Positions 34,326-61,501 of a stretch of 64,000 nucleotides of DNA are shown piece by piece (within the stretch, counting starts at the first letter, position 1; each line of letters starts with the position of its first letter). The translations under genes were made by a program, and so were the position numbers. The notes below the pieces were generated by a model. That model had not been told where the DNA came from and ran no database searches. It saw nothing but the letters and a program-made list of their open reading frames with translations. This stretch comes from Pristiophorus japonicus (Eukaryota), in assembly GCF_044704955.1 (NCBI RefSeq), contig NC_091989.1, forward strand, positions 85,994,001-86,058,000, read 5' to 3'.

Positions 34326-37300
34326 TTGGAGCAGGTGCAGGACATTCGGAAAAGGGAGGGTGTACAGCCAGTTGTCGTGATGCATATATGTATCAACGAT
34401 ATAGGTAAAAAATGTGATGAGGTCCTACGAGACGAATTTAGGGAGCTAGGAGTTAAATTAAAAAGTAGGTCCTCAAAAGTAGCAGTCTCAGGATTGCTAC
34501 CAGTGCTACGTGCTAGTCAGAGTAGGAATCATAGGATAGCTCAGATGAATATGTGGCTTGAGGAATAGTGCAGAAGGGAGAGATTCAAATTCCTGGGACA
34601 TTGGAACCGGTTCTGTAGAAGGTGGGACCAGCAAAAACCATTCAGTCTGCACCTGGGCAGGACCGGAACCGATGTCCTCGGGGGAGTGTTTGCGAGTGCG
34701 GTTTGGGAGGAGTTAAACTAATAAGGCAGGGGGATGGGAACCTATGCAGGGTGACAGAGGGGAATAAAATGGAGACAGAAGCAAAAGATAGAAAGGAGAA
34801 TAGTAAAAGTGGAGGTTAGAAAAACACAAGGCAAAAAACAAAAAGGGCCACTTTACAATAGAATTGTAAAGGTTAAAAGTGTGTTAAAAAGACAAGCCTG
34901 AAGGCTCTGTGCCTCAATGTGAGGAGCATTCAGAATAAGGTGGACAAATTAACTGCGCAGATAGCAGTTGACGGGGATGATGTGATTGGCATCACAGAAA
35001 CATAGCTCCAGGGTGACCAAGGCTGGGAACTCAACATTCGGGGTATTCAGCATTTAGGAAGGATAGAAGGATAGACATAAAGGAAAAGGAGGCGAGGTGG
35101 TATTGCTGGTTAAAGAGGAAATTAATGCAATCGTAAGGAAGGACATTAGCTTGGATGATGCGGAATCGGTATGGGTGGAGCTACAGAATACCAAAGGGCA
35201 GAAAATGCTAGTGGAAGTTGTGTACAGGCCACCAAATAGTGGTGATGAGGTTGGGGACAGCATCAAACAAGAAATAAGGGACGTGTGCAATAAAGATACA
35301 GCAGTAATCATGGGCGACTTTAATCTACATATTGATAGGGCTAACCTAACTGGTAGCAATGTGGTAGAGGAGGATTTCCAGGAATGTATTACGGATGGTT
35401 TTTGAGACCAATATGTCGCGGAACCAACCAGAGAGCTGGCCATCCTAGACTGGGTGATGTGTAATGAGAAGGGACTAATTAGCAATCTTGTTGTGCGAGG
35501 CCCCTTGGGGAAGAGTGACCATAATATGGTAGAATTCTTTATTAAGATAGAAGTGACAAAGTTAATTCAGAAACTAGGGTCCTGAACATAAGGAAAGATA
35601 ACTTTGATGGTATGATGCGAGAATTGGCTAGATTGGACTGGCAAATGATACTTAAAGGGTTGACAGTGGATAGGCAATGGCAAACCTTTAAAGATCATAT
35701 GGGCGAACATCAACAATTGTACATCCCTGTCTGGAGTAAAAATAAAACGCGAAAGGTGGCTCAACCATGGCTAACAAAGGAAATTAAGAATAGTGTTAAA
35801 TCCAAGGAAGAGGCATACAAATTAGCCAGAAAAAGTAGCAAGGCGGAGGACTGGGAGAAATTTAAAATGCAGCAGAGGAGGGCAAAGGGTTTAATTAAGA
35901 GAGGGAACATAGATTACGAGAGGAAGTTTGCCAGAAACATAAAAAATGACTGCAAAAGCTTCTATCGATTTGTGAAAAGAAACAGATTAGTGAAGACAAA
36001 CGTTGGTCTCTTGTAGTCGGATTCGGGTGAATTTATAATGGGGAACAAAGAAATGGCAGAGGAATTGAACAAGCACTTTGGTTCTGTCTTCACAAAAGAA
36101 GGCACAAGAAACCTTCCCAATGTACTAGGGGTCCGAAGGTCTAGTGAGAAGGAGGAACTGAAGGATATCCTTATTCAGCGGGAAATTGTGTTCGGGAAAT
36201 CCCCAGAGTCTACATCCCAGAGTACTTAAGGAAGTGGCCCTAGAAATAGGAGATGCATTGGTGATAATTTTCCAACAGTCTATTGGCTCTGCATCAGTTC
36301 CTATGGACTGGAAGGTTGCTAATGTAACACCACTTTTTAAAAAAGGAGGGAGAGAGAAAACATGTAATTATAGACCCGTTAGCCTGACATCAGTAGTGGG
36401 GAAAATGTTGAAATCAATCACTAAGCATGAAATAGCAGCACATTTGGAAAGCTGGGATCGGATTTGTCCAAGTCAGCATAGAGTTATGAAGGGGAAATCA
36501 TGCTTGTCAAATCTTCTGGATTTTTTTGAGGATTTAACTAGTAGAGTGGGCAGGGGAAAACCAGTGGATATAGTGTATTTGGAGTTTCAAAATGCTTTCG
36601 ACAGGGTCCCACACAAAAGATTGGTGTGCAAAATCAAAGCACATGGTATTGGGGGTAATGTACTGATGTGGATGGAGAATTGGTTGGCAGACAGGAAGCA
36701 GAGAGTCGGGATTAACGGGTCCTTTTCAGAATGGCAGGCAGTAACTAGTGGAGTGCCGCAGGGCTCTGTGCTGGGACCCCAGTTCTTTACAATATATATT
36801 AATGATTTGCATGATGGAATTGAGTGTAATATCTCCAAGTTTGCAGATGGCACTCAACTGCGTGCCGATGTGAGCTGTGAGGAGGCTGCAGGGTGATTTG
36901 GACAGGTTAGGCGAGTGGGCAAATACATGGCAGATGCAGTATAATGTGGATAAATGTGAGGTTATCCACTTTGGGGGCAAAAACACGAAGGCAGAATATT
37001 ATCTGAATGGCGGCAGATTAGGAAAAGGGGAGGTGCTGCGAGACTTGGGTGGCATGCTTCATCAGTCATTGAAGGTTGGAATGCAGGTACAGCAGGCAGT
37101 GAAGAAGGCAAATGGTATGTTGGCCTTCATAGCAAGGGGATTTGAGTATAGGAGCAGGGAAGTCTTGCTGCAGTTGTACAGGGCCTTGATGGCCCACCTG
37201 GAATATTGTGATCTGTTTTGGTCTCCTAATCAGAGGAAGGACGTTCTTCCTATTGAGGGAGTGCAGCGAAGGTTCACCAGACTGATTCCTGGGATAGCAG

Positions 37301-37765
37301 GACTGACATATGAGGAGAGACTGGATCGGCTGGGCCTGTATTCACTGGAGTTTAGAAGGATGAGAGGGTATCTCATAGAAATATATAAAGTTCTGACGGG
37401 ACTGGACAGGTTAAATGCAGGAAGAATGTTCCCGATGTTGGGGAAGTCCAGAACCAGGGAACATGGACTTAGGATATGGGGTAAGCCATTTAGGACTGAG
37501 ATGAGGAGAAACTTCTTCACTCAGAGATTTGTTAACCTATGGAATTCACTACTGCAGAGAGTTGTTGATGCCACTTCATTGCATATATTCAAGAGGGAGT
37601 TAGATATGCCCCTCGTGGCTTAAGGGATCAAGGGGTATGGAGAGAAAGCAGGAACGGGGTACTAAAGGAATGATCAGCCGTGATCTTATTGAATGGTGGT
37701 GCAGGCTCGAAGGGCCGGATGCCCTACTGCTGTACCTATTTTCTATGTTTCTATGTCTCTATGTT
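34326..37765 (+). mobile_element. CR1/HER1 LINE from ORF1 esterase remnant to 3' tail
   Basis: VVVMHICINDIG..VSGLLPVLR (ORF1), endonuclease 35097-35405, RT 36186-37623, TTTCTATG tail. Confidence 0.92.
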
Positions 37766-40916: not shown

Positions 40917-40971
40917 ATGTCTGTGTTTGATGTGCTGTTGCACCTCTCAGCCCTGGGCATTATTTACACAG
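40917..40971 (+). CDS. Exon 1: signal peptide (MSVFDVLLHLSALGIIYT)
   Basis: ATG at 40917, hydrophobic leader, ACA G|GTTTCT phase-1 donor (weak-ish) compatible with the V-exon acceptor 202 nt downstream. Typical Ig-superfamily split leader. Confidence 0.75.
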
Positions 40972-43900
40972 GTTTCTATATTTATACCTGTCTCATAACT
41001 AGGATAGTGCGAATAAAAACTCAATGAGCTGTGTAGAAGTCACTTCTGTGCAATGTTCATTGTATAATTTCCTCATTTTCTTTCGTACTATTTCTGCCGC
41101 ATTATTTCCTCCCTTTTAATCCCCCTGATCAGTATCACTGCCTGTAACCCGTGTTTGTATTTATTTCTGACAGTTACTGGCGTAACCTCTGTCTCGGTGA
41201 TTCAGATCCCCCACCATGTGACGCAGTTGAAAGGTAGAAATGTATCCATGTATTGTTCTTCGACGATGTTCGATCCCAACGAAGTTGTGGATGTTTATTG
41301 GCGGAGAGCCGGTCAGGACGGAACTTTGGATTCGACTGTAGACAACAGGAAAACAATGAAACCTTTCAAGCAAGGATCTGCCGAGTTGCACCTGCAGAAT
41401 GTGATTTTACAGGACTCCGGGGTCTATTATTGCAGCGTGAGAGACGGGAGAGGAAAGCTTTCCAACGGGAATGGGACGGAGCTTATTGTACATGGTGAGT
41501 CTTACTGAGGGGGTAATGGGCCAACGTATGATCATACAGCTGTAGGTCAGAGCGTATTTAATAATCAGCAGGCAGGCATGTTGTCTCAGTTCGGTTCGCA
41601 TTCTCTCCTATTTGCATAGAATCCTGGCTGTTCACACCGAGCCGCACCGATCAGCAAACACCGCAAGTCAGGAGGTCAGAATTCAGTCAATCATTGTTCT
41701 CTTTTCTCGAGACTGCTACTTAAATCTCCTTCATTTGATTAACTTAATTATCGGGATGTTGGCATCGCTGGCAAGACCGGCATTTATTGCCCATCCCTAA
41801 TTGCTCCTTGAGAAGGTGGTGGAGAGCCGCCTTCTTGAAACGCTGCCATCCGTGTGATGAACGTACTCCCACAGTGCTGTTACGAAAGGCGTTCAAGGAT
41901 GTTGATCCAGTGACAATTAAGGAGCAGCGATATATGTTCAATTCAGGATAATGTGTGACTTGCAGGGAAATTAGACGTGCTGGTGCTCCCAGGCGCCTTT
42001 CGCCCTTGTCCTTGCAGATGCTACAAGTCGCGGGTTTGGGAGGAGCTGCCGAAGAATACTTGTCGAGTTGCTGCAGTGCATCCTGCAGATGGTACACACT
42101 GCAGCCACGGCGCACATATGGCGGACTGAGTAGATGTTTAAGAAGGAGGAATATTTTTTTCCTGGATGGTGTCGAGCTGTCAAGAGGGTTTTTTCAGCTG
42201 CACTCAGTCAGGCAAGTGGAGGGTATTCCGTCAGACTCATGGTGGTTCAGCAGCCGAGCTACTCACCACAGAATATCTGGCAGCTGACCTGCTCTAATAG
42301 ACACGGCACGAAGCTAACGTAATACCTATCTTTAAAAAGCGAGATAGACCATGTCCAGGCAACTATAGACCAGTCAACTAAGCATCAGTGGTAGGAAAAA
42401 TAACGGAATAACTATTAAAGGAGAAAGCAGATGAACACGTAGAAGTCAAAATATAATAATAAATATTCAGCATGCATTTCCAAAAAGCTTGTCTTGCTTC
42501 ACAAATCTCATTGAATTTTATGAAGAGGTAACAGAAGAGTAATTTGTAGATGTAATTTATCTAGACTTTCAGAATGCCTTCGATAAGGTACCACATAATA
42601 GACTGATGAACAAGGTCAGAGAATGCAGAGTCAGGGGGCAAGTAGCAGAATGGGTCGCTCGCTGGCTTTAAGACAGAAAGCAGAGAGTGAGGGTAAAGGG
42701 TAACTATTCACAGTGGCAGAAGGTGGGTAGTGGTGTTCCACAAGGATCAATGCTGGGACCACTGTTATTCAAAATGTCTATGAACGATTTGGACTTTGGA
42801 ATCAAAAGCACAATTTCTAAATTTTCAGATGACGCTAAATTGCGAGGGATAGTCAATACTTAGGAGGACTGCAACAAATTACAGGAGGACATTAATAATC
42901 GTGCAGAATGGGCATATAATTGGCAAATGGATTTCAACACAGATAAATGTCAGGTTCTAAATTTTGGTCGGAAGAATAGGGAGGTCACTTATTCATTGGA
43001 GGATGTGAGGATTTCGGAGTACAAATACACAAATCGCTAAAAGCACCGACACAGATTAACAAGGCCATAAAAAGGGAAACCAAGCACGAGAGTTTATTTC
43101 TAGACTAATAGAATTGAAAAGGAGTGAAGTTATGCGAAACTTGTATCGAACCTTGATTAGACCATACAGAGTACTGCGTACAATGCTGGGTTGCCATATT
43201 ATAGAATGGATATCGAGACTCTGGAGAGCGTACAAGGAAGATTTACAAGGATGATACCAGAAATGCGAGGGTATACCTATCAGGAAAGAATGAACAGGCT
43301 GGGTCCCTTTTTACTTGAAAAAGAAGGCTGTTTGGTGAACTAATAGAGGTCTTTAAAATTATGAGAGGTTTTGATAGAGTGTGTCAGAGAGAGATTTTCC
43401 ACTTGTTTGGAGAAGCATAACTCGAGGCCATCAATATGATAGTTACCAACAAATCAAATAGGGAATTCACAAGAAACTTCTTTACCAAGAGGTTGGTGAG
43501 AATGTGGAACTCGCTGCGACAGGGAGTAGTTCAGGCAAATATCGTAAATGCATTTAAGGGGAAGCTATATACGCATATGAGGGAGAAAGGAATAGAGGCT
43601 TATGCTGATAGATTTAGATGAGGAAAGACAGGAGGAGGCTCGAGGAGCATAAACGTCGGTATGGACTGGTCCGGCCGAATTGCCTGTTTCTGTGCCGTAT
43701 ATCCTGTGGAATTCTACGTAATCCTGTGCATGTATGTGGCCATTTATATCACATATTTGTAAAAGGAAGAATAAGCTTCCTTTTATATTTTTAAATATTT
43801 AATGAATAAGCAAAAATGTGCATCAGACCGCGAATAGACTCCTAATTGGAATCACTTCCTTCAATTATACAAGCATTCAGGACCCGCTATCGACTCGGCG

Positions 43901-46900
43901 TTTATCCACATATTCCGGAATGTAATGACTTTACCCGAGTAGCGAGCGAGCCCAACCCGGAATACAACAGTGGATTGTCAGTAACTGTTAGCAAATAGAT
44001 GCAAGTGCTAAACAATGATAGAGATAAAGGACGAGCGGAGCCGGGGAAAACCAAGAGCAAAAATTAATCAACCAGGCAGAGGTGACAGTACACTCACTGT
44101 ACAACATTTTACAACATAAAGTAATAGGTATACTTACTGATAACATATATTATTTATGCTGATCGATTTTAGTTATCGCAATGAAAATCTATTCGATTCC
44201 ATAACAGATTGCATTTGCTCGAATATATTTTCAAAAATAGATTATTTTTACATTAATCGATTGTAGTTACAGTGATGAGACGGTGCTTACATTGATCACT
44301 CTAATTGCACTAATGAGAGTGTATACCTGCAGTTAAACATTTTTTTTACACTTGCTGGGTTTATTTGCACTGATGGAGTTGATTTCCATTGATAGTCGTA
44401 CTTATACAGGCAACAAATTTTAGACCTTGACAGCTGGGAATGGGTTTTTCAAGAATTGGATTAGGAAAATGTCCATAAAAAAAGTAAACTCCATGTCGCA
44501 AATCCGGAATATCTGCTGTTCCAAGTCACTCTGAGACTCCAACAAGATCACGGCGGTGAAGCCGATTATTTCCCATAGATCTCGGCGCCAGAGTGAAAGA
44601 CATGATTCAGACCAAGAATGGAGTCAACGGTTTGGCGCACAAGTTAGTTACACATGGTCATCTATGGAAAATAATTTGACAAGGATATTTATTCATCTTC
44701 TGCAGGTAACGTGCAGGTAACATTCCTTGGGGGGATTGGGGGGCGGTGATTGTGTTTAATGGATCTAACATTGTTTGGAATGCAGACCAAGGTACTGCGA
44801 GAACCGGGATAGGATCACTGTCACATGTTTGGTAAAATTTACGGATAAATTACGTTTTGAACTCGGGGTTAAATATTTATGAAAAGCACATAGTGACTGA
44901 TGAGTTTATAGCTTTCACTGAGCGACAGGATTCGGGTAGGGTGTGGCACAGCTGAGGACATTCGAAAGAAGCACAGTCCCGGAAAATAAAAGACCAGATT
45001 GTAAATGGGGATGTTAATCGTTGTGAGTGGAATAGTCACCAGTTGGATAAGATGGAGATAAATTTAATAGGATCTTTGAATAATTACGCCAGCAAATCGA
45101 GTTTCACAGTGTGACGTCGTCGTCCTGATGGAGATTAGAGTGCTCTCAAAAATAAACTCAAGTTCTAACAGGCAGTGTGAGGTTTGGGATCATAGCCAAA
45201 TGAGGAATTATTAATAAACCGAACAAGATAAAGTTAAATGGAAAGAGAGGAAATGAGCAGTGTATCTGTGGGAGAGTTGGGACGAAGAGGAACTGATACT
45301 ATTGCATGCAATGGGTTCTGATTCATTCCTCAGGGGTCTCCGCTGGGTCCAACGGAAATACAAGTTAATGCACTTCATCAATTGTTCAAAGAGACAGTAG
45401 AGGAGACACGGGATTGTGAAACCAAAGATCGCAATGTACTTATAGCGGACATTTAGTGTACAGAGTTTGCAAGGGGTATATATTGACGGTTGCAAATCCC
45501 AGTACGTATTCCTCTCGGCACGTTTCATAGATCCAGTTGCAATTTCAACCGTTATGTCGGCTGGAATTTCAGGTGCTGAATTCATTAATCGGAGACGCGA
45601 GGGAAGGATTTTTTACGAGAAACTTCTGTCTTGGTGAGGGATCTGCTCCACTGAATGAGGGATTATTTCTATGTCAGGAATAGAGCGGGGCTGGATATTG
45701 TTAAATTTCCAGATCATATCATTTGGCCCATAGATGAGGCTAGCGATATAATGATGTTCAGAATGGAACTGGATTTAAAATTTGCATATTTAAAAGTAAT
45801 TGACTAGGCCACCGTTGAAGCAGTGCGTATAATTTGAGGTACTTTATTGGCGTCAAGGAGACGGTGTAAATGTATTTACTTGGTGATGTCAGTCGTAAAT
45901 GCTGTGGATAAAAAAAGTTATAAGCAGACCCAGTTGAAGGGGTTTGAGCGGCGTTACACGGATGAGAAAGGTGGTTATATTTAGCATTAGTTGTAGAAAA
46001 GGAAATTGGAGGTTAGAACTTTATTTTTACTCAAAGGATCATTCGAGCATAGGATAGATTGGCACCAGGGCTGGTAAATGAAATCAAACACAAAGGTCTG
46101 GAGGGAATTAGATTAACACATGAGGGAAAATATTAAAGAATGTGGGTGAAGTTAACGGGACTGGATTGAGGTCGAGAACTTGAGTGCGGCTTGTAATATC
46201 TCTCTCTGCCTTTAACTTCTGTAATTTAACCGTAAAGTAAAGAGGGAAAGAATTGGACAAGGAACACTGAGGCAGTCCAGGTCAGCGACGCTCAGCCACA
46301 AAGTACATCCCAGTTGGGTCACTCAATGATGATCCATATCGCGCTAGCAAGGCTCCAGTCAGGAGGGAAGCCATAAGAATGTAAGAAATATGAGCAGCAG
46401 TAGGCTACCTGGCCCTGCCAGCCTGCTCCGCCATTTAATAAGATCATGGCTGATCGGATCATGGACTCAGCTCCACTTCCCTGCCCGCTCCCCATAAAGC
46501 TGTATTCCCTTATCGTTCAAAAATCTGTCGACTGAATTTACTTCACCCACAAGGAATGATGCACACGGGTCTCAGTAACCGCAAAATATTGGGAGGATGG
46601 CTATTCTGATATACCTTTGGACAATTTATCGTTTCATTCATGACACCGGAACAGTAACAAAGACTTGAAATTATTCACACGGAGCATGAACCGGGCTCAA
46701 GGCCTGATCCTGGAAATGAACCGATTAAGTGAGCTGTGGAACAGAAAGCTTCCCTCAGGTTGGACCTTGACAGCAAGTCCCAGACTGGAGTGGAACTTCT
46801 CCATGTTGTTGCATGGAGTTACCACTCAGTCTGTGAAACCATGTTACTGCCTCCCTATTAGCAAAGCTGGAACGTATTTAAAACCAAAGGTCTAAACCAC

Positions 46901-49900
46901 AGTGAAACACGAGCAGGAAGATGGCTCGGGACTGGTTCTGTTTAATTGGGACCTAAATTCGGTTCAGTGCAGACATAGAGACTTCCCCTCACTGAGTGTG
47001 GATAAAGACAAGAACAAAAGAAAAAATGACATGTACTGCTTCAGGCTAATGACATATTCCTTATACATATTAATATGTCGATGAAATGACCCCATTAAAG
47101 TAACACTGCAGCCGCTACATATTCTCCTTTCTCGACAGCTATTCTTTCATTTTCCTAATGTAACACAAGAGTAGCGATTTGAACTCTTTGTCTTGTCCTC
47201 CTTTCCAGTGCCGCCAAGCCCTGTGAAGGTGACCCGCCTGCCCTCTCGGCCGCTTACACTCCTATGTACAACAGGTGGGTTTTTCCCGGAGGAGTTTACG
47301 CTCACTTGGTATAAAAATAACATGAAAATGACATCTGGGGTAAACACAACGGAAAGACGGAGCGAGCAGGGATTATATCAGGTTTCAAGCTCCCTCAACC
47401 CTGTGGAGAGCGGGTCAGTGTATCGCTGTGAAGTGTCTCATGTCACTCTCTGGGCTCCAGCCGAAGGCAGCTACACGGTTCGTGATCCGGGTAAGAGGCT
47501 CAGATTCTCAATACTGCCCTGAACTGTATCTGTGTTATATATAGGGAAATGTCACGGGCTTTCTGTCCCCATTAATCGTTAACCAGAACATTCTCAATGG
47601 AGGGATTGTGACTGGAGTTACTGCGTTCATTGCAGTGTCAACAACATTTTGATGATGGGCTGCGCAACATATCACTAAGTAAGATGGAATGGGCTGTGTT
47701 TAGAGGGCAGGTCCTGATTTGAATATGAAATCGGTTGCATTCTCATAGACAGAGGGTTGCTTTTAATGGCAGTGAATCCATGTGTATGCCCACTACTAGT
47801 TGGATGCAATAGGGATTGGTGTAGGACCGTTACTCTTCATGACTTATATCAATGATCTGGGTGAAGGTTTAGGATGTTCACTGATTGTACAAATATCTGT
47901 ACTGGTGCCAGAACCGTTGAGGAGCAAAAAAGGTTACAGTCTCATGTAGATGTGATGGGGGAATGAGCTTGCATCTGGCAGATTATATTAAGGTGGATAT
48001 ACGTAGTGCAATACATGTGGATAGGGCAAGTGCCAAGTATGTGTATAGTGGGCTGGGTTCTGAAATAAACAATGTTGTGCAGGAACGAGACCTCGGTGTT
48101 ATAGTATAAGAATATGTAAAGGTCCGCGACCAACGCGGAGAGGCTATAGACAAACACATGCAGAGCATAGGGATGTATAACAGGAACAAACTATTACAAA
48201 GGTGCCCTTTACATGATCAATCCTCATCGATAACACTGTGCCCAGTTCTGCTCCCTGAAATGGTGAAAGATATAGAGGCATTGTGAAAAGGAACACAGGA
48301 GAGATACTACATTGAGGGTTGATTGAAACACCCTTAATTATCATGCTAGGTTCAAATTTCTGGGTATGTATACTTTTTAAAACGCGTAGATTTCTGGTAG
48401 ACTTAATTGTACAAGGAAGTGGCTAGACTGTGTACAAGTGAATCGAGTATTTGAATTGCATAAATTGGGGCGAAGCAGGGGACAAGAATACATATTATGT
48501 AAGCACAGAACTATTTAGATATCAGGAGACTTTTCTTCTCCCAGAAGATCACTGGCCTTTGGAATAAGCCAAAGGCTTATGCTATCAGTGCGCATTCGTT
48601 GCAAATGTTTAAAAGGAGCTGGGCGAGTACTTGGAGGAGGAGGCTGTCGTGGAATCCTACAGCACAGATGTAGGCCATTGTGCCTGTGCCCGCTCTTTCG
48701 TAGAGCTATCCAATTAGTCGCACTCAACTGCACTTTACCCATAGCCCTGTAAATGTTTTCCCTTCAAGTATATATACAATTCTCTTTTGAATGTTACTTA
48801 TGAATCTGCTTCCATCATGCTTTCAGGCAGCGCATTCCAGATCCCAACAACTCGCTGTGTATTGTTTTCCTCAAATCGCCTCTGCTTCTTTTGCCAACCA
48901 CCATAAATCTGTGTCCTCGGGTTATCGACCCTTGTACCATCGAAAACAGTTTTCCTTATTTGCTCTCTAAAAACTGTTCATGGTTTTGAACACCTCTATC
49001 AAATCTCCTCTGAAAGTTCTCGACTGTGAAAAGAACAACCCCAGCTTCTCCAGTCTCTCTACATAATTGAATTTCCTCGGCCCTGGTCATGCCAGTAAAT
49101 CTCTGCTGCACCTTCACTAAGGCCTTGCCATTCTTCCGAAAGTAAGGTGTCGAGAATGAGATAAAATACTCCAGCTGAGACCTAACAAGTGCGTTGTTAG
49201 GGTTCAGCATAATTTCCTTGCTTTTCAATAATATTCCGCTATTAATAAAGTAAAGAATCATATATCATTTGGTAACAGCCTTCGCAACGTGCTCTGTCAG
49301 CATGACATATTTGTATACGTACACCTCCAAGTCTCTCTATCCTGGTCCCCATTTAAAATTCTATCATTTACTTTATATTACCGCTCCTCATTCTTCCGAC
49401 CAAAATGTATCATTTCATATTTCTCTGTGTTAAATTTCATCCACCACGTGTCTGTCCATTTTACTAATCTGTCTCGGTCCTCTCGGTTAGTAACCTCCTC
49501 ATTCTTTCCTACATTTCCAAGTTTTGTGTTATCTGTAAACTTTGAAATTATGACCTCTATACCCAAGTCCATGTCATTAACATATATTAAACAGAGCAGT
49601 AATCCTAATACCGACCTCTGCAGAACACCATTATAAACATTCCTCCAGTCTGAAAAACAATTGTTCACCACTACACTTGGCTTTCTGTCCCTTTGCAAAT
49701 TGTATATCCATTTTGCGACTGACCCTTTAATCACATGGCATTCAATTTGCTAACAAGTCTATTAATGTGGTACTTTAACAAACATGTTTTCCAAAGTCCA
49801 TCAACCCTCTCCGTTAATTCATCAAATACCTCAATCAATTAGTCAAAACCAATTTGCATTATACAAAACCATGCTGACTTTAATGTATGAGCCCATACTT

Positions 49901-52516
49901 TTCCAGTTAAATTTGTCCAGGATTATTCCCTCTCAAAGTCTTCCAGCACCGACATTAGGCTGACTGGCCTGTCGTTGTAGTGTGTATCCCTCTCCGCCTT
50001 TTTAAACAGGGAAGTAATATTTCCAATCTTCCAATCCTTTGGCACCACCCTGGTATCCAATGTTGTGACAAGGAGCAGACCTGAAACCAAGCAGATCCCT
50101 CGGAATAATATCACTGAGTACAAAATTCAGGTTGTGTCCTGTGTGACGTGTCTATTGGCCAAAATTCTCTACTGGAACTCATTTCTCATCGCCTTCGAGT
50201 AAATTTCCCATTATTTATTTTCCCGAATAGGCCAAGGGTTTATTTTTTTATTCGTTTGGGAGTTTTACGGGGGAAAGATACACGGGGAGAAAGAGATACA
50301 TATATCGTGAATCGCACAAATATATATTCATGTACACGTCATGAAGAAAGCTGCCTAACCATTGGTTCAGATATGACAATCAGAATTAAATGCTGATATT
50401 ATGACACAATGAAAGTCGCAGTGTTTTTTTTCTTTGTGTAATTTGACAAAAAGACCTCAGGATAAAAGAAAAGATGCTGTACCCTTAGTATTTCCGTCAG
50501 AGACAATGGCTGTGATCTGTCGGTGCTGCCTGATATCTGACGCCGTTTAATAATTTAACATCATCTTTACTGTACAATGCTAACATTCCCCTTTCGCTGT
50601 CCCTTTTAGCTAACGGTATCGGTCGTTTCTTCTACTGCTTGGTGGTTGGATGTCCAGCAGGCGTGTTAATATTAATAATTGTAGTGCTGGTAATTCTTGT
50701 CAAGCGAGACAAATTAGGCAGAACTGAAGGTAAGACGTCACACAATCCCTGTTCAGAATTGGGTGCTTTCGTCCAGTTACAGATCAGCACTGCGGCACCG
50801 AGGAGGTTAAAGGATCCAGACTGGGATCTAGCTTTTGACAGCAGTGTCTATTGCACTGAGAGTTTGCCCTGCTGTGGCCCACTGTTGTGGTGCATGTAGG
50901 ACCTGAAACCCAACAGATGCGTCAGAATAATTTCACCATATTTGAACTAAAACTAAACGGTATTTTCCTTCTTTACAACAACTGAAGATGGTGATGTGGA
51001 CGCTGTACAATAAATGTCCCTAATTTAGGGCTATAGAGAGGGGCAGCAACCCTGGGGCAGAGGGTATCAACCAGATGGTGCGAATGTAGCACGGGATGTC
51101 CGGCTGTAAAATCGCCCCATCTCACCCACCAATAGAATCGGATTTGACGGGTTATATTCGAACCATGTGAGTAGTGTGCCCGCTCAGACACGTTTCTACT
51201 GATCGATGAGTCTGGTCAATTTGATAGAATGTTGCGTAACTTTTGGCGGGCACGTTGCGCATCACGATGAAATTGATCACTGATGTAAATGTCTTTCTCC
51301 ACTAGGCACTGAGATTAGTGAGGATATACCAGGCCACTTCGAGGAGCAGGTCAGTGTCATGTTGCTGTGACGACAAATATATTGCTATCGCATATGTACT
51401 GCACATTTACACCGTGGTTATAACGGTATTGCCGGAATATCAGAAGGGCTCCCGGTGACTGTGGGCACACGGTGATCACTGCCGGGTCCAATGTTTCACC
51501 AGTGTCCTCCCCTCCTCTGATGGTATAACTTTTGACCCCACAGTGCAGCGATGCAACCCCCAAGTTCTCGCAGACATCGTTGTTGATATGTGCACTTTGT
51601 CAGTGCGCATTGAGTGGCTATTTAACCACGCGAAGCTTCATAACCGAGCTCGGTCCTTCGGTCCTGCTCTCCTCCAACATCCACACCCATGATCTGTTCA
51701 GCGGGATCTGTGAGTGCAGATCGGGGCTGGTCCCCTGGTTAAAACCCCCCAACCTTTCCCGGGCCCAGAGCCACTGAGGGCAATTATCTTTTCTGAAAGC
51801 TACACACTCAGAACTTGGACGTGTGCTAACCGCGTAGCAGCACACGGGCTAGGCCTTGACTCACTAATCCAACATCAGCTCTGATAACACGAATTATGGA
51901 AGAATCTGTAGGGTAATGACACCGGCTGAGAATTAGATATCTCCGTTCTCCTTGTCTGACCCATTACCACACGGACAATGCCATTTACATCAATGATCGG
52001 CACTGATCATACTTCCCATTCATTAATCAATGTGTCTGTCCTTTAGTCGTACTGTACTGTGCTGTTTGTGATTTGATGTGGAGTTAATATCTCCCCATTA
52101 ACTCTCCTCAGAACATGCGAAGTGGAGATGGGGAGAGTCTGTCTTACGCTGCTCTCAACCTCAGGAAAATCGGGGAACCCAGACATGAGGAAGACCGTGA
52201 TGTCTATGCCCAGGTACAGCCGAGAAACACAGCAACCCATTCCAAAATAGCCTGGTCCGGTACTGGTGTTTGATCTTAGTAATCTGCATTGACAACCTAG
52301 AACAGCTAATGTCCTCCTGATCTTTCATTGTTGCTCCCACAGACCAAGCAAGGAGCAGATGGTAAACTGACTTACGTGTCTCTGGATTTCACGGCTTCTC
52401 AGAAAAAGGGAAGGCGGAAACAGAAGGAAACCAGAGCGGAATATGCCGAGATCAGGATAAATAAGCCAAGCGGAGAATTCGGGATTGTATCATCACCACC
52501 AAGAGCCCAGAGATGA
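40917..52516 (+). CDS. Spliced 7-exon gene: VJ-C1 immunoglobulin-superfamily inhibitory receptor (SIRP-alpha/NKp30-like architecture), 365 aa
   Basis: Exons join at GT-AG sites with phases 1,1,1,1,0,0 into one open frame of 55+321+282+120+44+102+174=1098 nt ending in TGA at 52514-52516. Domain order: leader, V-set, C1-set, TM, four Tyr motifs. Confidence 0.88.
41174..41494 (+). CDS. Exon 2: V-set Ig domain with in-exon J-like G strand
   Basis: Acceptor TTTCTGACAG|; B-strand Cys (NVSMYC), C-strand Trp (VYWRR), LHLQNV..DSGVYYC, then GNGTELIVH; donor CAT G|GTGAGT. Confidence 0.95.
41750..42300 (-). mobile_element. 3' end of CR1/L2-group element (same family as 17150-18115), intron 2
   Basis: Shared TTGAGAAGGTGGTGG.GAGCCGCCTTCTT and GATGGT.CACACTGCAGCCACGG blocks. 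Confidence 0.75.
42310..43720 (+). mobile_element. Degenerate CR1 LINE, intron 2
   Basis: NYRPV, LDFQNAFDKVPH, GVPQGSMLGP, FSDDAK, RNFFTKRLVRMWNSL. Confidence 0.85.
44780..46530. mobile_element. Highly decayed + strand CR1 remnants plus a short - strand CR1 3' fragment (46374-46530)
   Basis: Eroded RT-3' text around 45870-46200; 46374-46530 matches the 3' UTR seen at 32101-32280. Confidence 0.55.
47209..47490 (+). CDS. Exon 3: C1-set Ig constant domain
   Basis: Polypyrimidine acceptor TCCTCCTTTCCAG|; LLCTTGGFFPEEFTLTW, GLYQVSSSL, and YRCEVSH (Ig/MHC signature Y-x-C-x-V-x-H); donor CCG G|GTAAGA. Confidence 0.95.
47820..50070. mobile_element. Two CR1 remnants in intron 3 (+ ~47820-48650; - ~48650-50070)
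   Basis: ORFs 48956-49261, 49378-49734 (GVLQRSVLG, SKFTDNTKLG) and 49923-50123; + strand eroded RT 3' text. Confidence 0.8.
50610..50729 (+). CDS. Exon 4: short stalk and transmembrane helix (ANGIGRFFYCLVVGCPAGVLILIIVVLVILVKRDKLGRTE)
   Basis: Acceptor CCCTTTTAG|; about 25 hydrophobic residues with no charged residue, followed by a KRDK stop-transfer; donor GAA G|GTAAGA. Confidence 0.9.
51306..51349 (+). CDS. Exon 5: cytoplasmic linker (GTEISEDIPGHFEEQ)
   Basis: Acceptor TCTTTCTCCACTAG|; donor CAG|GTCAGT. The 44-nt exon converts phase 1 to phase 0 exactly as exon 6 requires. Confidence 0.75.
52112..52213 (+). CDS. Exon 6: cytoplasmic, ITIM LSYAAL plus DVYAQ
   Basis: Acceptor CTCTCCTCAG|; NMRSGDGESLSYAALNLRKIGEPRHEEDRDVYAQ; donor CAG|GTACAG; 102 nt, phase 0-0. 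Confidence 0.85.
52343..52516 (+). CDS. Exon 7 (terminal coding): ITIM LTYVSL plus AEYAEI
   Basis: Acceptor TTGCTCCCACAG|; TKQGADGKLTYVSLDF...RAEYAEIRINK...RAQR*; AATAAA follows 180 nt later. Confidence 0.88.
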   Translation, partial: TKQGADGKLTYVSLDFTASQKKGRRKQKETRAEYAEIRINKPSGEFGIVSSPPRAQR

Positions 52517-52809: not shown

Positions 52810-54430
52810 ACATGGCATTTATTAAGCAGGAGGAGGTCATTGGATCCAACAGGTCCATGCCGAGGTTTATGCTCCAAGTGAGTCACCTCCCACTTTATTT
52901 CATCTAACTCCATCACCATAACCTTCGATCCCTTTCGCTCACATGTGTTCATCCAGCTCCCCTTAAATGCACCTATTCTAGTCGCCTCAACTATTCCTTG
53001 TAGTAGCGAGTAGCACAATCTAACCACTCTGTTTGTAAAGCGCTTCTCCCGATTTGGATCCACTATCTTATATGTATGGCCCCTTGTTCTAGTCTTGACC
53101 TCAAGTGGAAGCATCTTCTCTACATATCAAATCCTTTCATAATCGTAAAGAGCTCTATCAGGTCAGTCCTCAGTCTTCTCTTTTAAAGAGAAATGTTCAA
53201 TCTTTCCTGATAGGTATACCTCATATATCTGGTATAATTCTAGTAAATCTTTTTTGCACCTTATCCAGTGTCTCCATATCGTTTTTATAATATAGAAACC
53301 AGAAGTATTTACAATACTCCAAGTGGGGATCTAATCAAGGTTCTATACAGATTCAACATTACTTCTCTGCTTTTTACTTCTATCATTCTAGAAATGTGCC
53401 CCAGTGTTTTGTATGCTTTTCTATGAACCTATGGATCTGTGTTGCCACTTTTAATGATTTGTGCAAATGTGGCCCCGATCACTGAGTTCATGTAGCCAAG
53501 TTAGACTCTTATTTTCCAAGCAGTACGTGGCCTCCTCATTCTTCCCAGAAAAATGTTCCATTTCACACTTAGCTATATTGAAGTTCATTTGCCACATTAC
53601 ACGCACATTCTGCAAGTTTATTAATGTCTTCCCGTAAGTTGTAACAGTCCTCGTCTGTATTAATTACACCACATCCCTCCAAATTTGGTGTCATCCGCAA
53701 ATTTTGCAATCGTACTTCTGATTCCCGAGTGAAAATTGTTTACGTAAATGGTGAGCAACAGTGTTGCCAGCAACAAACCTTATGTAACATAATTTTCCAC
53801 CTTTTGCCAATCTGATTAACTACCTTTCACACCTACTCTTATTTTACAGTTTTGTTGCAAGCTTGCTAGACATTTTGCCACTTGCCCCCGATTCCTGTTC
53901 TGACCTTCGTTATGTGTCTACTACGCCATACCTTATCGAAGGTTTTTTTGTAAATCCAAATGTCTTACTGCATTACCCTTACTACATTTTCTGTTAATTC
54001 GTAAATAATTCAACGCGGTTGATCAAACCTAACCTTCCCGTTGGGAATCCATGGTGACTACACATCATGACATTTTCAGTTTCAGGATATGTTTTTATTG
54101 CATCATTAAGTAAAGGCTCCAATATATTTCTGTTGTTACGTTTATTGGGCTATAGTTCTATGGACTTGCTCGAGCTCCCTTTTAAAATATAGGAATCACA
54201 TTAGCTGTCCTCTAGACCTCCGGCACTGTACACTTTTCTAATGAATTTGTAATGATTTATTTATTATATATATATATATATATCAAGTAGTGCCTCCGCT
54301 ATGTCTTCATTAACTTCTATTAATATGCATGGATGCAATCATGCAATCCATCTGGACCAGGGGTTTTATCCTCTGTAGTGTGATTAGTTTTCCAATGTTC
54401 TACCACCCTCCCCCCCTTCCTATCTTAAAT
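52810..54430 (-). mobile_element. Degenerate CR1 LINE containing a (TA)n run at ~54265-54283
   Basis: ORF 52770-53114 (RTRGHTYKI..RVVRL); AKFADDTKFG on the - strand near 53680-53710. Confidence 0.8.
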
Positions 54431-54469
54431 GCCTTCATATATGTATTGCTCTCTTCGAACTATGTCAGT

Positions 54470-57400
54470 TTCTCTCGAAAAGACAGGCAGAATGGAAAAC
54501 GATGTGATGATTCTAATAATAAAGGATTACATCAGGGCAGCAGTGAGAAAGGAACTTGCATCAGAAAATCAAAAAGTAGAATCAGTGTGGGTGGAGATAA
54601 GAAATAACATGGGGCAGAACACACGGATGGGAGTCGTTTATGTTTCCTAGCAGTAGCTGGACAGAATATTCATCAAGACATAATAGGAACTTGTAACAAA
54701 GGTAATACAATAATCATGGGTGATTTAATGTTCATATGGACTGGGCAAATAAAATTGGCAAAGGTAGTTTGCAGGACGAGTTCATAGAATGCATTCGAGA
54801 GAGTTTCCTCAAACAATACATCATGGAAACAATCAGGGAACATGGTATTTTAAATTTTGTATTGTGTAATGACACAGGGTAAATTAATACTCTCTATAGT
54901 AAAAAAAATCCTCTGGGGAAGAGTGAAATTAACATGATAGAATTTCACGTTTACTTTGAGAGGGACATACTTAAGTCCTAAAGTAGAGATTAAACATAAA
55001 TAAAATCAATCACATAGATATGAGGGGCGAATTGGCCAATGTAGATTGGCAAATTAGATTAAAAGGTGAGACAGTCGATTAGCAGTGGCAAACATTTGAA
55101 TACATATTGCAAAATTCTCAACCAATATACATTGCATTGACAAATATAAACCTCACAGGAAATGTAATCCACCCATGGCAACTAAATAAATTAAGGATAA
55201 TATTAGATTAAACAAAGAGTCTTATAATATTGCGAAGAATAATAGTAAACCTGGGGAGAGGAGACCAGAAACCAGCAATGATTAACCACAATATTGATAA
55301 AAACGGAAAAAATATAATATGAGACTAAACTAACTATAAATGAATATATCGTAAGAACCTCTATCTGTATGTAAAAAGGAAGCGATTTGCAAAAGAGGCT
55401 TAAACAGGTGAAAATAGAAGTGGAAATAAGGAAATTGCAGAGACTTTAAACAAATACTTTGTATCTCTCTTCACAGTAGAAAACACAAAAATTATTCCAA
55501 AAATAGTAGGGAACAAAGCGACTAATAAATATCCGGAACTTATAGTAATTCATATCAATAGAGAAAAAATACTTGAGAAACGAATGGAACTAGAAGCTGA
55601 AAAATCCCCTGGATGTCATGGCCTGCATCCTAGTGCTCTAAAAGAGGGGGCTGCAGAGATAGTGGATGCATTGATTGTGACCTTTCAAATTACCCTAGAT
55701 TCTAGAAGGGTCCTTGTGCATTTGAAGGTAACAAATGTAACCCCACAATTCAAGAAAGGAGGGAGATAGAATAATTTCACTGACATCAGTCATCGGGAGA
55801 ATGCTGAAATTCATTATTAAGGAAGCGGTAAAAGGGCACTTAGAAAATCATAATATGATTAGGCAGAGTCTACATGATTTTATGAAATGGAAAACTTTTT
55901 TGAGAGTGTTTTGAGGATGTGATTAGCTGGATAGATAAAGGAAAGCCAGTAGATGTAGTTTGATTTCCAAAAGGCATTCGACAAGTTGCCCCATGTGCAA
56001 GATAAGGGCTCGTGGGGTCAGGGGTAATATATTAGCATGGATAGAGAATTGTTTACTGGTCAGAAAACAGAGAGTAGGGATAAATGGGTCATTTTATGTA
56101 GTGGGCTGCCTCAAGGGAGCTTGCCAGCAAAGTTAGAGCCCATGGAATAAAAGGGACAGTGAAAGCATAAATGCGAAACTGGCTAAGTGACTGGAAACAG
56201 AGAGCAGTGGTGAACGGTTGTTTTTGAGACTCGGGGAAGGTATAAAATGTTGTTCCCCAGGGTTTGGTACTGGGACCACTGCTTTTATTGATATATATTA
56301 ATGACTTGGACGGGTGCATAGGGCTCAAATTTTCAGATGACACAATACGTAGAAGTACAGTGAACAGTGAGGAGGATATTGATATACTTCAAGAGGACAT
56401 AGACAGGCTGGTGGAATGGGTGGACATTAATGCACAAAAGTGCAAAGTGATGCATTTCGGTAGCAAAAACGAGGAGAAGAAATATAAACTAAAGGATACA
56501 ATTCTAAAGTGGTAGCATGAATAGAGAGACATGGGGGTATATGTGCACAAATCGTTGAAGGTGTCAGGATAGGATTAGAAAGGAGTTAAAAATGTATACA
56601 CACCCTAGGCTTTATAAATATAGGCATAGAGTATAAACGCAAGGAAGTTATGATGAACCTTTATAAAACACTGGTGCAGCCTTAACTGGAGCATTTTGTC
56701 CAATTCTGGGCACCATACTTTATGAAGGAAGGGAAGGTCTTAGAGATGTACAGAAAAGATTTACGAAAATGATTTCAGGGATGAGGGATTTCAGTTACGT
56801 GAATAGACTGGAGAAGCTGGAGTTGTTCTCTTGGAGCAGAGAAGATTGAGAAGAGATTTAATAGAGAAGTTCAAAATCATGAGGGGTCTAGACAGAGTAA
56901 ACAGAGATGAAGTGTTCCCATTGACCAAAGAGTCGAGGACCAGAGGACACAGATTTAAGGTGATTGACAGAAGAGCCAAATGCGGTATGAACAACAACTT
57001 TAGGCAGCGAACCGTTATGATCAGGAATGCATCCCTGAGAGGCTGGTGGAGGCAGATTCAATTGTGGCTTTCAAAAGGGAATTGGATAAATACCTGAAGA
57101 AAAACAATGCAGGGTTATGGGGAAAGGGTGGGAGAAGTGGGACTGGTTGAATTGCTCTTGCCGACAACCTGCATGGGCTCGACGGGGCGAGTGGCCTCCT
57201 TTTGTGCTGCAACTATTCTATGATTCTGTCAGTGCTTGGGCCTCAGCTATATATAATCCACAGTAATGACTTAGGAGAAGAGACCCAGTGTAGAGAATTC
57301 AGGTTTGCTGATGATTCAAAAATAGGTGGTAAAGTAAGAACATAAGAACATAAGAAATAGGAGCAGGAGTCGGTCATTCGGCCCTTTGAGCTAGCTTCGC

Positions 57401-58465: not shown

Positions 58466-58469
58466 AAAT

Positions 58470-61287: not shown

Positions 61288-61501
61288 TATTATGTCTCAA
61301 ATAAAGCAATGTGACTGAGTACTGTGGAATTGAGTTAGTGTGACCTTAGTCTCTTTATTCTGACTCTAGAGTGCTGGCAGAGCATGGGAGGCCTGCTTTA
61401 TATGCAGTGATCCCAAGGGATGCTGGGATCCCTTGCAACTCCAACAGATGCGCCCTCTGGTGGCGGTATAGTGCTGGTTATAAGGTGTTGCGTACATAAC
61501 A
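61288..61501 (-). repeat. 3' LTR of the Gypsy element
   Basis: On the - strand it begins TGTTATG right after a purine tract (GGGATAGAG), contains TATAAAG and AATAAA, and ends GACATAATA. Confidence 0.8.

What the first reader, a model, noticed from the sequence alone, without database searches (positions are those of the whole stretch)
40917..52516. Hidden 7-exon gene for a non-rearranging VJ-C1 receptor with a SIRP-alpha-style four-tyrosine inhibitory tail
Seen: the ORF track shows only scattered pieces, but seven exons splice in frame into a 365-aa protein of leader, V, C1, TM and tail. The V exon already contains its J-like G strand (CSVRDGRGKLSNGNGTELIV), and I saw no heptamer/nonamer RSS next to it. 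Known: C1-set domains are largely confined to Ig, TCR, MHC, B2M, tapasin and SIRP-type molecules, and a germline V(J)+C1 membrane protein is the architecture proposed for the pre-RAG antigen-receptor ancestor. SIRP (KSGAGTELSV) and NKp30 (GTGNGTRLVV) likewise have G-x-G without the preceding F/W. Inference: this is a TCR-chain-shaped ectodomain wired to inhibitory motifs, plausibly a self-recognition/checkpoint receptor of a little-characterised cartilaginous-fish family. Mammalian SIRPs have V-C1-C1; this gene has one C1.
Basis: partly seen in the sequence, partly recalled or inferred. Interest (0 to 1): 0.85.

Follow-up and report, generated by a model that had tools for sequence, protein, structure and literature searches.

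The report
Shark SIRP-like inhibitory V-C1 receptor gene
This is an intact seven-exon gene for a cell-surface immune receptor with one antibody-like variable domain, one constant domain and an inhibitory signalling tail; it belongs to a large family, found so far only in sharks, rays and chimaeras, that databases predict under contradictory names and that no paper I could search describes.

Summary
Seven + strand exons (40917-52516) have canonical GT-AG sites, Ig-type phase-1 introns and a split leader. They give a 1098-nt frame with no internal stop. The exons encode a V-set domain with a germline J-like G strand (no RSS), one C1-set domain, an uncharged TM segment and a tail with two canonical ITIMs plus two further tyrosines.

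All six exon peptides long enough to compare match about 70 predicted proteins in the same order. All named ones come from cartilaginous fishes (15 or more species). The best match is 68-69% identical, so this gene's own product is absent from the collections searched.

RefSeq names the relatives inconsistently: SIRP-alpha-like, tapasin-related-like, NCR3LG1-like, Ig lambda-like. Some relatives keep the ectodomain but have an Arg in the TM and almost no tail, so this is a paired inhibitory/activating family of the SIRP-alpha/beta type.

It is not a strict SIRP member. It has one C1 domain instead of two, and neither domain is specifically closest to SIRP by sequence. No transcript evidence or synteny could be obtained.

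The scan flagged sister genes before: three on this same piece and clusters on other pieces of this genome. I class it as a new variant of a known kind, of moderate interest.

The parts
40917..40971 (+). Exon 1: ATG and the first part of the split leader (18 codons + 1 nt), with donor AG|GT.
   Evidence: The leader matches residues 1-18 of P0155, P0157 and P0165 (61-72% identity).
40972..41173 (+). Leader intron of 202 nt, phase 1, the antigen-receptor-type 'split leader' layout.
   Evidence: The split leader is described as canonical for AgR, UrIg and UrIg2 genes in PMC12227049.
41174..41494 (+). Exon 2: end of the leader plus a compact V-set domain with a germline J-like G strand (SNGNGTELIVH). 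Cys27 and Cys86, and sequons NVS and NGT.
   Evidence: Pfam V-set 4.3e-11. AF2 pLDDT 88.7 with no C'' strand. Nearest folds are VNAR, V-lambda, NKp30 and TCR V. 68-69% identical to P0155 and P0157. Cys and sequon positions.
47209..47490 (+). Exon 3: a single C1-set domain (LLCTTGGFFPEEFTLTWYKN ... YRCEVSH), phase 1 at both ends.
   Evidence: Pfam C1-set 2.3e-14. AF2 pLDDT 91.0. Nearest folds are MHC class II beta2, TM about 0.8. 63-68% identical to P0156, P0165 and P0157.
50610..50729 (+). Exon 4: short stalk, an uncharged transmembrane segment (FFYCLVVGCPAGVLILIIVVLVILV) and a basic stop-transfer (KRDK).
   Evidence: 54-65% identical to the TM region of P0155, P0156 and P0157.
51306..51349 (+). 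Exon 5: a 44-nt mini-exon (TEISEDIPGHFEEQ). It shifts the intron phase from 1 to 0.
   Evidence: 13 of 14 residues are identical to Heterodontus P0151 residues 259-272.
52112..52213 (+). Exon 6: tail module 1, with ITIM LSYAAL and a second tyrosine DVYAQ|T 20 residues later.
   Evidence: The motif RTVYAQTKQG is conserved across the exon 6/7 junction in the family alignment, which confirms that junction.
52343..52516 (+). Exon 7: tail module 2, with ITIM LTYVSL and AEYAEI 23 residues later, then stop TGA at 52514-52516.
   Evidence: 71% identical to the P0157 C-terminus. Modules 1 and 2 align with each other: only 4 of 2000 shuffles reach the score.

Best explanation
The locus is an intact gene for a type I membrane glycoprotein that is not in the protein databases searched. 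Its parts in order are a split leader, a compact antigen-receptor-type V domain with its J-like strand already joined in the germline, one C1-set domain, an uncharged TM segment and a roughly 110-residue tail.

The gene is an inhibitory member of a multigene family of paired V-C1 receptors. That family was found only in cartilaginous fishes.

Proposed mechanism (inferred, not shown): the V domain binds a still unknown ligand through its variable BC, C-D and FG loops. Src-family kinases then phosphorylate the tail. The two modules, each an ITIM plus a second tyrosine 20-23 residues downstream, recruit the tandem SH2 domains of SHP-1/SHP-2, as SIRP-alpha does, and damp activation of the cell that carries the receptor.

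Sister genes with nearly the same ectodomain but an Arg in the TM and a 6-13 residue tail would signal the opposite way, through an acidic-TM adaptor of the FcR-gamma/CD3-zeta/DAP12 type.
For: Shown:
- The gene model is intact, with canonical splice sites and phases.
- The domains are V-set and C1-set by Pfam and by predicted fold.
- There is no RSS.
- Every exon matches full-length homologues in the same order.
- The window falls in an elasmobranch-only clade in both the V tree (SH-aLRT 100) and the C1 tree (SH-aLRT 97).
- An exhaustive HMMER scan of 1.84 billion representatives with the V exon found family-type V + C1 proteins, and every one that was named is chondrichthyan. The next-best C1 scores drop from above 90 bits to 16 bits or less.
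- Several paralogues sit on one chromosome per species.
- Arg-TM short-tail members exist: P0165/P0168 (86% identical to the ITIM form P0157), P0017, P0138 and P0185.
- Variability among relatives is highest in the BC loop, the C-D region with the D strand, and the FG loop, and lowest in strands C, F and G.

From the literature:
- SIRP-alpha ITIMs recruit SHP-1/2 (PMC12975943).
- The SIRP-alpha motifs are ITYADL, TEYASI and LTYADL (PMC5413580).
- The SHP2-binding SIRP-alpha peptide is DITYADLNLPKGKK...TEYASIQTS (PMC5589908). It resembles LSYAALNLRKIG...DVYAQT here.

Lead only: the nearest named clusters by protein-language-model features are SIRP-alpha and SIRP-alpha-like, at 0.96.
Against: - I have no transcript evidence for this locus. 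No RNA run was listed.
- Phosphorylation, SHP binding and ligand are all untested.
- The second tyrosine (DVYAQT) is neither a canonical ITIM nor an ITSM.
- The tail could not be compared with a real SIRP-alpha tail by any tool. The tail-only searches came back blank for technical reasons.
- The restriction to chondrichthyans rests on single-sequence V sensitivity and on word-indexed searches, so distant bony-vertebrate kin such as SIRP or PRARP are not excluded.
Confidence: 0.75

Rival explanations
1. It is the true cartilaginous-fish orthologue of SIRP-alpha, and the family is the orthologue of the SIRP cluster. Either it has lost one C1 domain, or it predates the D2/D3 duplication. On this reading it binds a CD47-like ligand.
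For: - The most frequent RefSeq name among relatives is 'tyrosine-protein phosphatase non-receptor type substrate 1-like'.
- The Atlas features search puts SIRP-alpha nearest, at 0.96.
- In the whole-family profile search, SIRP-alpha D3 scored 42.6 bits, including the VPPT linker. That is higher than the single Ig C domains (20.8-25.0 bits) and the UrIg2 C2/C3 domains (29.2 and 31.7 bits) shown beside it.
- The tail motifs and the paired Arg-TM forms resemble SIRP-alpha and SIRP-beta.
- SIRP splice forms with D1 only exist (PMC12975943), and family isoforms lack the C1 exon in the same way (P0011, P0014, P0005).
Against: - There is one C1 domain, not two, in every family member seen.
- The V-only profile does not retrieve the SIRP V domain at E<=1e-6. 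CD79b, VNAR, PD-L1, NKp30 and TCR-alpha all score 32-37 bits.
- In the C1-only profile search, SIRP-alpha (51 bits summed over two domains) does not exceed single-domain HLA-DQ beta2, IgNAR C1 or B7-H6 at 48-52 bits.
- No bony-vertebrate SIRP appeared in the searches.
Confidence: 0.2
2. It is an unexpressed or recently dead copy: an open but silent paralogue in a repeat-rich region of a fast-turning-over multigene family.
For: - The window is full of LINE and LTR fragments.
- No RNA run could be listed.
- The gene's product is not in the protein collections searched; the best match is 69% identical.
- A decayed Arg-TM exon relic lies 17 kb upstream, so gene decay does occur here.
Against: - All seven exons are open, with canonical splice sites and conserved phases.
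- All invariant family residues that can be checked are present: both Cys pairs, both Trp, the G-x-G strand and both ITIM tyrosines.
- End-branch lengths in both trees (0.36 and 0.27) are at or near the family medians of 0.35 and 0.31.
Confidence: 0.1
3. It is a B7-like or tapasin-related-like ligand or chaperone rather than a signalling receptor, as some automatic names of relatives suggest (CD276 homolog, NCR3LG1-like, tapasin-related-like).
For: - Names of relatives.
- Weak Pfam matches to CD80-like C2-set_2 (2e-5) and butyrophilin C2-set_3 (2e-4).
- B7-H6 and CD276 appear among the PDB sequence hits.
- Atlas structure rows include PD-L1-like, butyrophilin-like and tapasin-related clusters, at TM about 0.5.
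Against: - C1-set scores far higher (53.9 bits) than the B7-type C models.
- The protein starts directly with leader plus V, so the large N-terminal tapasin domain is absent.
- The conserved ITIM tail and the Arg-TM partners are hallmarks of receptors.
- The J-like G strand is of the antigen-receptor/NKp30 type.
Confidence: 0.05

Closest known systems
SIRP-alpha / SIRP-beta (signal-regulatory proteins, PTPNS1/SHPS-1)
   Same: - N-terminal V domain with a germline J-like G-x-G-T-x-L-x-V strand, followed by C1-set domain(s).
- A tail with four tyrosines in two modules, each an ITIM plus a second Tyr.
- Local tail similarity that extends beyond the motif.
- Paired relatives with a basic TM residue and a short tail.
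- V-only splice forms.
   Different: - One C1 domain instead of two.
- Arg rather than Lys in the activating partners' TM.
- The V and C1 sequences are not specifically closest to SIRP.
- The second tyrosine motif is (T/D)VYAQT rather than TEYASI.
- Ligand unknown.
- Found only in cartilaginous fishes so far.
UrIg / UrIg2 (non-rearranging shark VJ-C genes; PMC12227049)
   Same: - A single-exon VJ domain with a split leader.
- Non-rearranging.
- C1-type constant domain.
- UrIg2 is the top non-antibody solved-structure match by summed score.
   Different: - UrIg2 has 9-11 C domains.
- The text of that paper holds no occurrence of ITIM or 'inhibitory'.
- Here there is one C1 plus an ITIM tail, and a large paired multigene family.
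- Similarity to UrIg2 (53.6 bits for V + C1) is far below within-family scores (212-570 bits).
NKp30 (NCR3)
   Same: - A compact non-rearranging VJ domain.
- The G strand carries the same G-N-G-T sequon (from my own knowledge of the NKp30 sequence).
- NKp30 is among the nearest solved folds (ranks 10 and 29) and among the V-profile hits (32.5 bits).
- It uses an Arg in its TM, like the family's activating forms (established knowledge).
   Different: - NKp30 has no C1 domain and no ITIM tail.
- It is a single gene in mammals.
[quoted passage not shown] 2019, cited in PMC10751288)
   Same: Non-rearranging VJ gene cited as evidence for a VJ-C1 precursor. From memory only, the architecture is V-C-TM-tail.
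   Different: Not compared. No bird, reptile or bony-fish protein with a family-type C1 appeared in the searches.
TCR and Ig light chains
   Same: V(J)-C1 ectodomain layout, split leader and phase-1 introns. Light chains align over both domains in one stretch (61-66 bits).
   Different: No RSS and no separate J segment. The signalling tail is built in, so no CD3 or CD79 partner is implied. There is an N-glycan sequon on the J-like strand.

Membership tests
Unnamed chondrichthyan VJ-C1 paired-receptor family (RefSeq models such as XP_067905922, XP_038661939, XP_072135199) | Co-linear leader-V-C1-TM-tail with high identity in every part. | tested here: met
   Against the closest full-length homologue, P0157: V 68%, C1 63%, TM 65%, mini-exon 86% and exon 7 71%. 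The best match over any family member reaches V 69%, C1 68%, TM 65%, mini-exon 93% and exon 7 71%. All parts are in the same order.
Unnamed chondrichthyan VJ-C1 paired-receptor family (RefSeq models such as XP_067905922, XP_038661939, XP_072135199) | Placement inside the family in separate V and C1 trees. | tested here: met
   The window falls in a 17-row elasmobranch clade, SH-aLRT 100 in the V tree and 97 in the C1 tree. These are quick trees with no outgroup of other families.
SIRP family | N-terminal V-set domain with a germline J-like strand. | tested here: met
SIRP family | [quoted passage not shown] | tested here: not met
   There is only one C1 exon between V and TM, and tblastn finds no second C1 in the window. 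Relatives also have one.
SIRP family | ITIM-bearing tail with four tyrosines that recruits SHP-1/2. | tested here: inconclusive
   The motif pattern and spacing are met (PMC5413580, PMC5589908). Sequence homology of the tail could not be scored. Binding is not testable here.
SIRP family | V and C1 sequences closer to SIRP than to other IgSF families. | tested here: inconclusive
   For: the Atlas score of 0.96 and D3 at 42.6 bits. Against: the V profile misses SIRP, and the C1 profile ranks SIRP level with MHC II beta2, IgNAR and B7-H6.
SIRP family | Binds CD47. | not testable with these tools
   No ligand data.
UrIg / UrIg2 | Non-rearranging single-exon VJ with a split leader. | tested here: met
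   definition from PMC12227049.
UrIg / UrIg2 | Multiple C domains (UrIg2 has 9-11). | tested here: not met
   One C1 exon.
Rearranging antigen receptors (TCR/Ig) | RSS-flanked V segment with separate J segments. | tested here: not met
   The J-like strand lies inside the V exon. There is no heptamer at the exon and no heptamer-spacer-nonamer in the window.
Tapasin-related protein (TAPBPL) | Large N-terminal domain preceding IgV and IgC1. | tested here: not met
   The V domain follows the leader directly, both in this gene and in its relatives.
B7 family (CD276, NCR3LG1) | B7-type IgV plus CD80-like IgC, with no ITIM tail. | tested here: not met
   C1-set scores 53.9 bits against C2-set_2 at 24.9 and C2-set_3 at 21.7. 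An ITIM tail is present.
PRARP | Sequence relationship to chicken PRARP-A/B. | not tested
   Neither the paper nor the sequences could be obtained.

The most novel reading that the evidence does not exclude
The family is a surviving, diversified branch of the pre-RAG VJ-C1 receptor lineage. On this reading it is sister to, or ancestral to, both SIRPs and the rearranging antigen-receptor chains. It would show that the primordial V(J)-C1 membrane chain signalled directly through ITIM tails and Arg-TM adaptor pairing before it was coupled to CD3 or CD79.
Probability: 0.12. Interest if true: 0.8.

Novelty: new variant of a known kind. Interest (0 to 1): 0.5.

Why it matters
Non-rearranging VJ-C1 genes are the architecture proposed for the precursor of antibodies and T-cell receptors (PMC10751288, PMC12227049). 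So far only a few have been discussed: UrIg, UrIg2, NKp30, PRARP and SIRP.

This is a large family of such genes, with inhibitory and putative activating pairs, present from chimaeras to sharks and rays. It carries contradictory automatic names and I found no paper about it. It would add a well-populated data point to that question.

It would also give comparative immunologists a candidate SIRP-like checkpoint system in the oldest jawed vertebrates.

This particular gene adds a clean, intact member whose own product is not in the protein collections searched.

Tried and rejected
- **Joined product.** I made no search, fold or Atlas look-up with the joined 365-aa product. Exons were searched one by one by reference, and full-length comparisons used natural homologues returned by the tools. 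The exons were concatenated only inside one script, to count length, frame and stops. Nothing from that was printed or sent on.
- **RNA evidence.** The look-up of sequencing runs listed no run.
- **Tail homology to SIRP-alpha.**
  - The Atlas search on the tail alone scored 0.80 or less, which is chance level.
  - The word-indexed search of a Mobula tail found only 32 candidates, all family members.
  - The PDB search with exon 7 found nothing.
- **Bony-vertebrate relatives.** The profile search reached only weak V-only hits in sturgeon and lungfish (E 6e-13 and 1e-9, covering 10-11% of the query). These proteins have no C1 domain.
- **Other Ig exons in the window.** There are none. The weak V hit at 14490-14555 (E 0.008) lies in no Ig-like ORF, and I treat it as chance.
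- **Fold searches.** They confirmed the domain types but did not discriminate between families: all V hits were about 1e-9 and all C1 hits about 1e-7.
- **Literature.** The PRARP and UrIg (2023) papers are not held. Searches for shark SIRP or VJ-C1 ITIM receptors found no description of this family.
Full report
**Observation**

The exons are 40917-40971, 41174-41494, 47209-47490, 50610-50729, 51306-51349, 52112-52213 and 52343-52516 on the + strand. Every intron starts with GT and ends with AG after a pyrimidine tract.

The first four introns are phase 1, as is usual between Ig-superfamily domain exons. The 44-nt fifth exon resets the phase to 0. The seven pieces add up to 1098 nt, which is 365 codons plus TGA, without an internal stop.

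The exons were joined only inside that script, to count frame and stops. Everything below was done exon by exon by reference, or with natural full-length homologues returned by the tools.

**What the exons encode**

Pfam calls exon 2 a V-set domain (E 4.3e-11) and exon 3 a C1-set domain (E 2.3e-14). That is well above the CD80-like and butyrophilin-type C models.

AlphaFold models built from family alignments are confident: pLDDT 88.7 for V and 91.0 for C1.

The V model has strands A, A', B, C, D, E and F and a bulged G strand. It has no C'' strand. Its nearest solved folds are shark VNARs, lambda V domains, NKp30, TCR V and CD79b, all at about 1e-9. The C1 model superposes on MHC class II beta2 domains at TM about 0.8.

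The V exon ends with ...DSGVYYCSVRDGRGKLSNGNGTELIVH. The F strand, the CDR3-like loop and a J-like G-x-G-T-x-L-x-V strand are therefore contiguous in the germline. Sequence matches to TCR-gamma and TCR-alpha and to light chains cover exactly this F-G part.

No CACAGTG heptamer lies at the exon; the nearest is 376 nt downstream and has no nonamer. No heptamer-spacer-nonamer exists anywhere in the window.

The leader is split by a 202-nt intron. PMC12227049 calls that layout canonical for antigen-receptor, UrIg and UrIg2 genes.

Exon 4 carries an uncharged hydrophobic segment followed by KRDK.

Exons 6 and 7 each carry one canonical ITIM (LSYAAL, LTYVSL) followed 20 or 23 residues later by a second tyrosine (DVYAQ|T, AEYAEI). 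The two modules align with each other better than 1996 of 2000 shuffles.

**Relatives**

An exhaustive HMMER scan of 1.84 billion cluster representatives with the V exon gave single-domain matches of 47-64% identity. Two word-indexed searches seeded with a full-length hit and with a 14-member alignment added more.

A local profile test splits everything fetched into two sharp classes. About 70 proteins have both a family-type V and a family-type C1. In the members not already listed, V scores above 85 bits and C1 above 90 bits. All the rest have C1 at 16 bits or less.

Every family protein whose source was looked up comes from a cartilaginous fish. The species are Heptranchias, Heterodontus, Hemiscyllium, Chiloscyllium, Scyliorhinus (two species), Mustelus, Cetorhinus, Carcharodon, Mobula (two species), Hemitrygon, Hypanus, Narcine, Amblyraja and Callorhinchus. 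Several paralogues lie on one chromosome in each species.

Their automatic names contradict one another. 'Tyrosine-protein phosphatase non-receptor type substrate 1-like' (SIRP-alpha-like) is the most frequent. The others are tapasin-related-like, NCR3LG1-like, CD276 homolog, Ig lambda-like, H-2 class I-like, DQ-beta-like and 'uncharacterized'.

The window's six comparable exon peptides match these proteins in the same order. Local E-values are V 6e-49, C1 2e-41, TM 2e-7, mini-exon 6e-5 (13 of 14 residues identical to Heterodontus), exon 6 1e-6 and exon 7 3e-17.

The family motif RTVYAQTKQG spans the exon 6/7 junction. That independently supports this splice.

The best identity to anything in the collections is 68-69%. 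So this gene's own product is not in them, and 'hidden' is fair.

In separate V and C1 trees the window sits in a well-supported elasmobranch-only clade (SH-aLRT 100 and 97) with ordinary branch lengths. Chimaera genes and further elasmobranch paralogues form other lineages.

**Paired forms**

A survey of TM segments and tails shows that most members carry the ITIM tail. Several keep the ectodomain but have one Arg near the outer end of the TM and only 6-13 cytoplasmic residues. These are P0165/P0168 of Heptranchias (86% identical to the ITIM form P0157), P0017, P0138 and P0185.

This is the inhibitory/activating pairing known from SIRP-alpha/SIRP-beta and other paired receptors (PMC12975943). 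The window gene is of the inhibitory type.

Natural isoforms without the C1 exon also exist (P0011, P0014, P0005). They parallel the D1-only SIRP splice forms mentioned in the same review.

Among relatives, variability is highest in the BC loop, the C-D region with the D strand, and the FG loop. It is lowest in strands C, F and G. That is the pattern expected if those loops contact a ligand.

**Relation to known families**

*SIRP, points in favour*
- The architecture matches.
- The paired Arg-TM forms match.
- The tail resembles SIRP-alpha. The SIRP-alpha motifs are ITYADL, TEYASI and LTYADL (PMC5413580). The SHP2-binding peptide DITYADLNLPKGKK...TEYASIQTS (PMC5589908) resembles LSYAALNLRKIG...DVYAQT beyond the bare motif.
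- The nearest named Atlas clusters are SIRP-alpha, at 0.96. This is a lead only.
- SIRP-alpha D3 scores 42.6 bits in the whole-family profile search, including the VPPT linker.

*SIRP, points against*
- There is one C1 domain instead of the defining two.
- A V-only profile does not retrieve SIRP V at E<=1e-6. CD79b, VNAR, PD-L1, NKp30 and TCR-alpha all score 32-37 bits.
- A C1-only profile ranks SIRP-alpha no higher than HLA-DQ beta2, IgNAR C1 or B7-H6.

I therefore describe the gene as working like a SIRP. I do not file it as a SIRP family member.

*Other families*
- UrIg and UrIg2 share the non-rearranging VJ and the split leader. UrIg2 has nine to eleven C domains, and the paper's text never mentions ITIM or 'inhibitory'.
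- Tapasin-related proteins need a large N-terminal domain that is absent here.
- B7-type C models score far lower than C1-set.
- PRARP could not be compared, because neither the paper nor the sequences are held.

**What could not be done**
- No RNA run was listed for the locus, so the junctions rest on conservation alone.
- The tail could not be scored against a real SIRP-alpha tail.
- Literature searches found no paper on a shark SIRP-like or VJ-C1 ITIM family in the held library. Subscription journals are largely missing from that library.

**Surroundings and earlier notes**

The rest of the window is LINE and LTR retrotransposon debris, with no second Ig gene.

A 36-codon stretch at 24036-23929 on the minus strand resembles the Arg-TM exon of the activating relatives (E 1e-5). 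It has three Arg residues, no usable acceptor site and no V or C1 exon with it. I read it as a relic.

The scan's own notes list similar seven-exon genes 293 kb and 929 kb upstream and 18.3 Mb downstream on this piece, and clusters on other pieces. I did not check them. If they are right, this genome has the same multigene layout as the annotated species.

**Verdict**

The gene is an intact inhibitory member of a chondrichthyan VJ-C1 paired-receptor family that has been predicted but apparently not characterised, and its own product is not in the protein collections searched. I rate it a new variant of a known kind, interest about 0.5.

Noticed in passing
window 23929-24036 (minus strand): A 36-codon stretch (…FHTIRLCRFRSRLIVIMVGSTLIVEYLKSDAFNT*) resembles the Arg-containing TM exon of the short-tailed, putatively activating family members P0165, P0168, P0185 and P0017 (tblastn E 1e-5, 50% identity). 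It has three Arg residues, no in-frame AG acceptor upstream, and no V or C1 exon on that strand in the window. It is probably a decayed exon of a lost activating partner gene.
   Followed up: partly
relatives P0165/P0168, P0017, P0138, P0185 (not in the window): The family contains paired forms: the same V-C1 ectodomain with a TM Arg and a 6-13 residue tail, alongside the ITIM-tailed forms. The Arg sits near the outer end of the TM, as in FcR-gamma/CD3-zeta-coupled receptors (that comparison is from my own knowledge).
   Followed up: partly
window 41174-41494: The V domain is compact. Only 44 residues lie between the conserved Trp and the second Cys, and the model has no C'' strand. Shark VNARs and NKp30 are among its nearest folds. 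The J-like strand carries an N-glycan sequon (NGT) that is conserved in the family and would sit on the face used for V-V pairing in antibodies and TCRs.
   Followed up: partly
window 52112-52213 and 52343-52516: The two tail modules (an ITIM plus a second Tyr) align with each other (local score 36, reached by 4 of 2000 shuffles). Exon 7 also aligns with both modules of the chimaera protein P0060. This suggests an internal duplication that predates the family's radiation.
   Followed up: partly
relatives P0011, P0014, P0005, P0194: RefSeq isoforms of relatives skip the C1 exon, giving V-TM-tail. This is possible because both flanking introns are phase 1. The same skip would keep the frame in the window gene.
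   Followed up: no
window 1-40000 and 53000-64000: Dense retrotransposon debris. There are several LINE reverse-transcriptase and endonuclease ORFs on both strands (for example 2651-4183, 8275-9213, 36186-37623) and an LTR-element integrase core at 62185-62484 (Pfam rve 2.4e-14). There is also a Pro/Ala/Cys-rich low-complexity repeat at 19.8-20.4 kb. No other cellular gene was recognised.
   Followed up: partly
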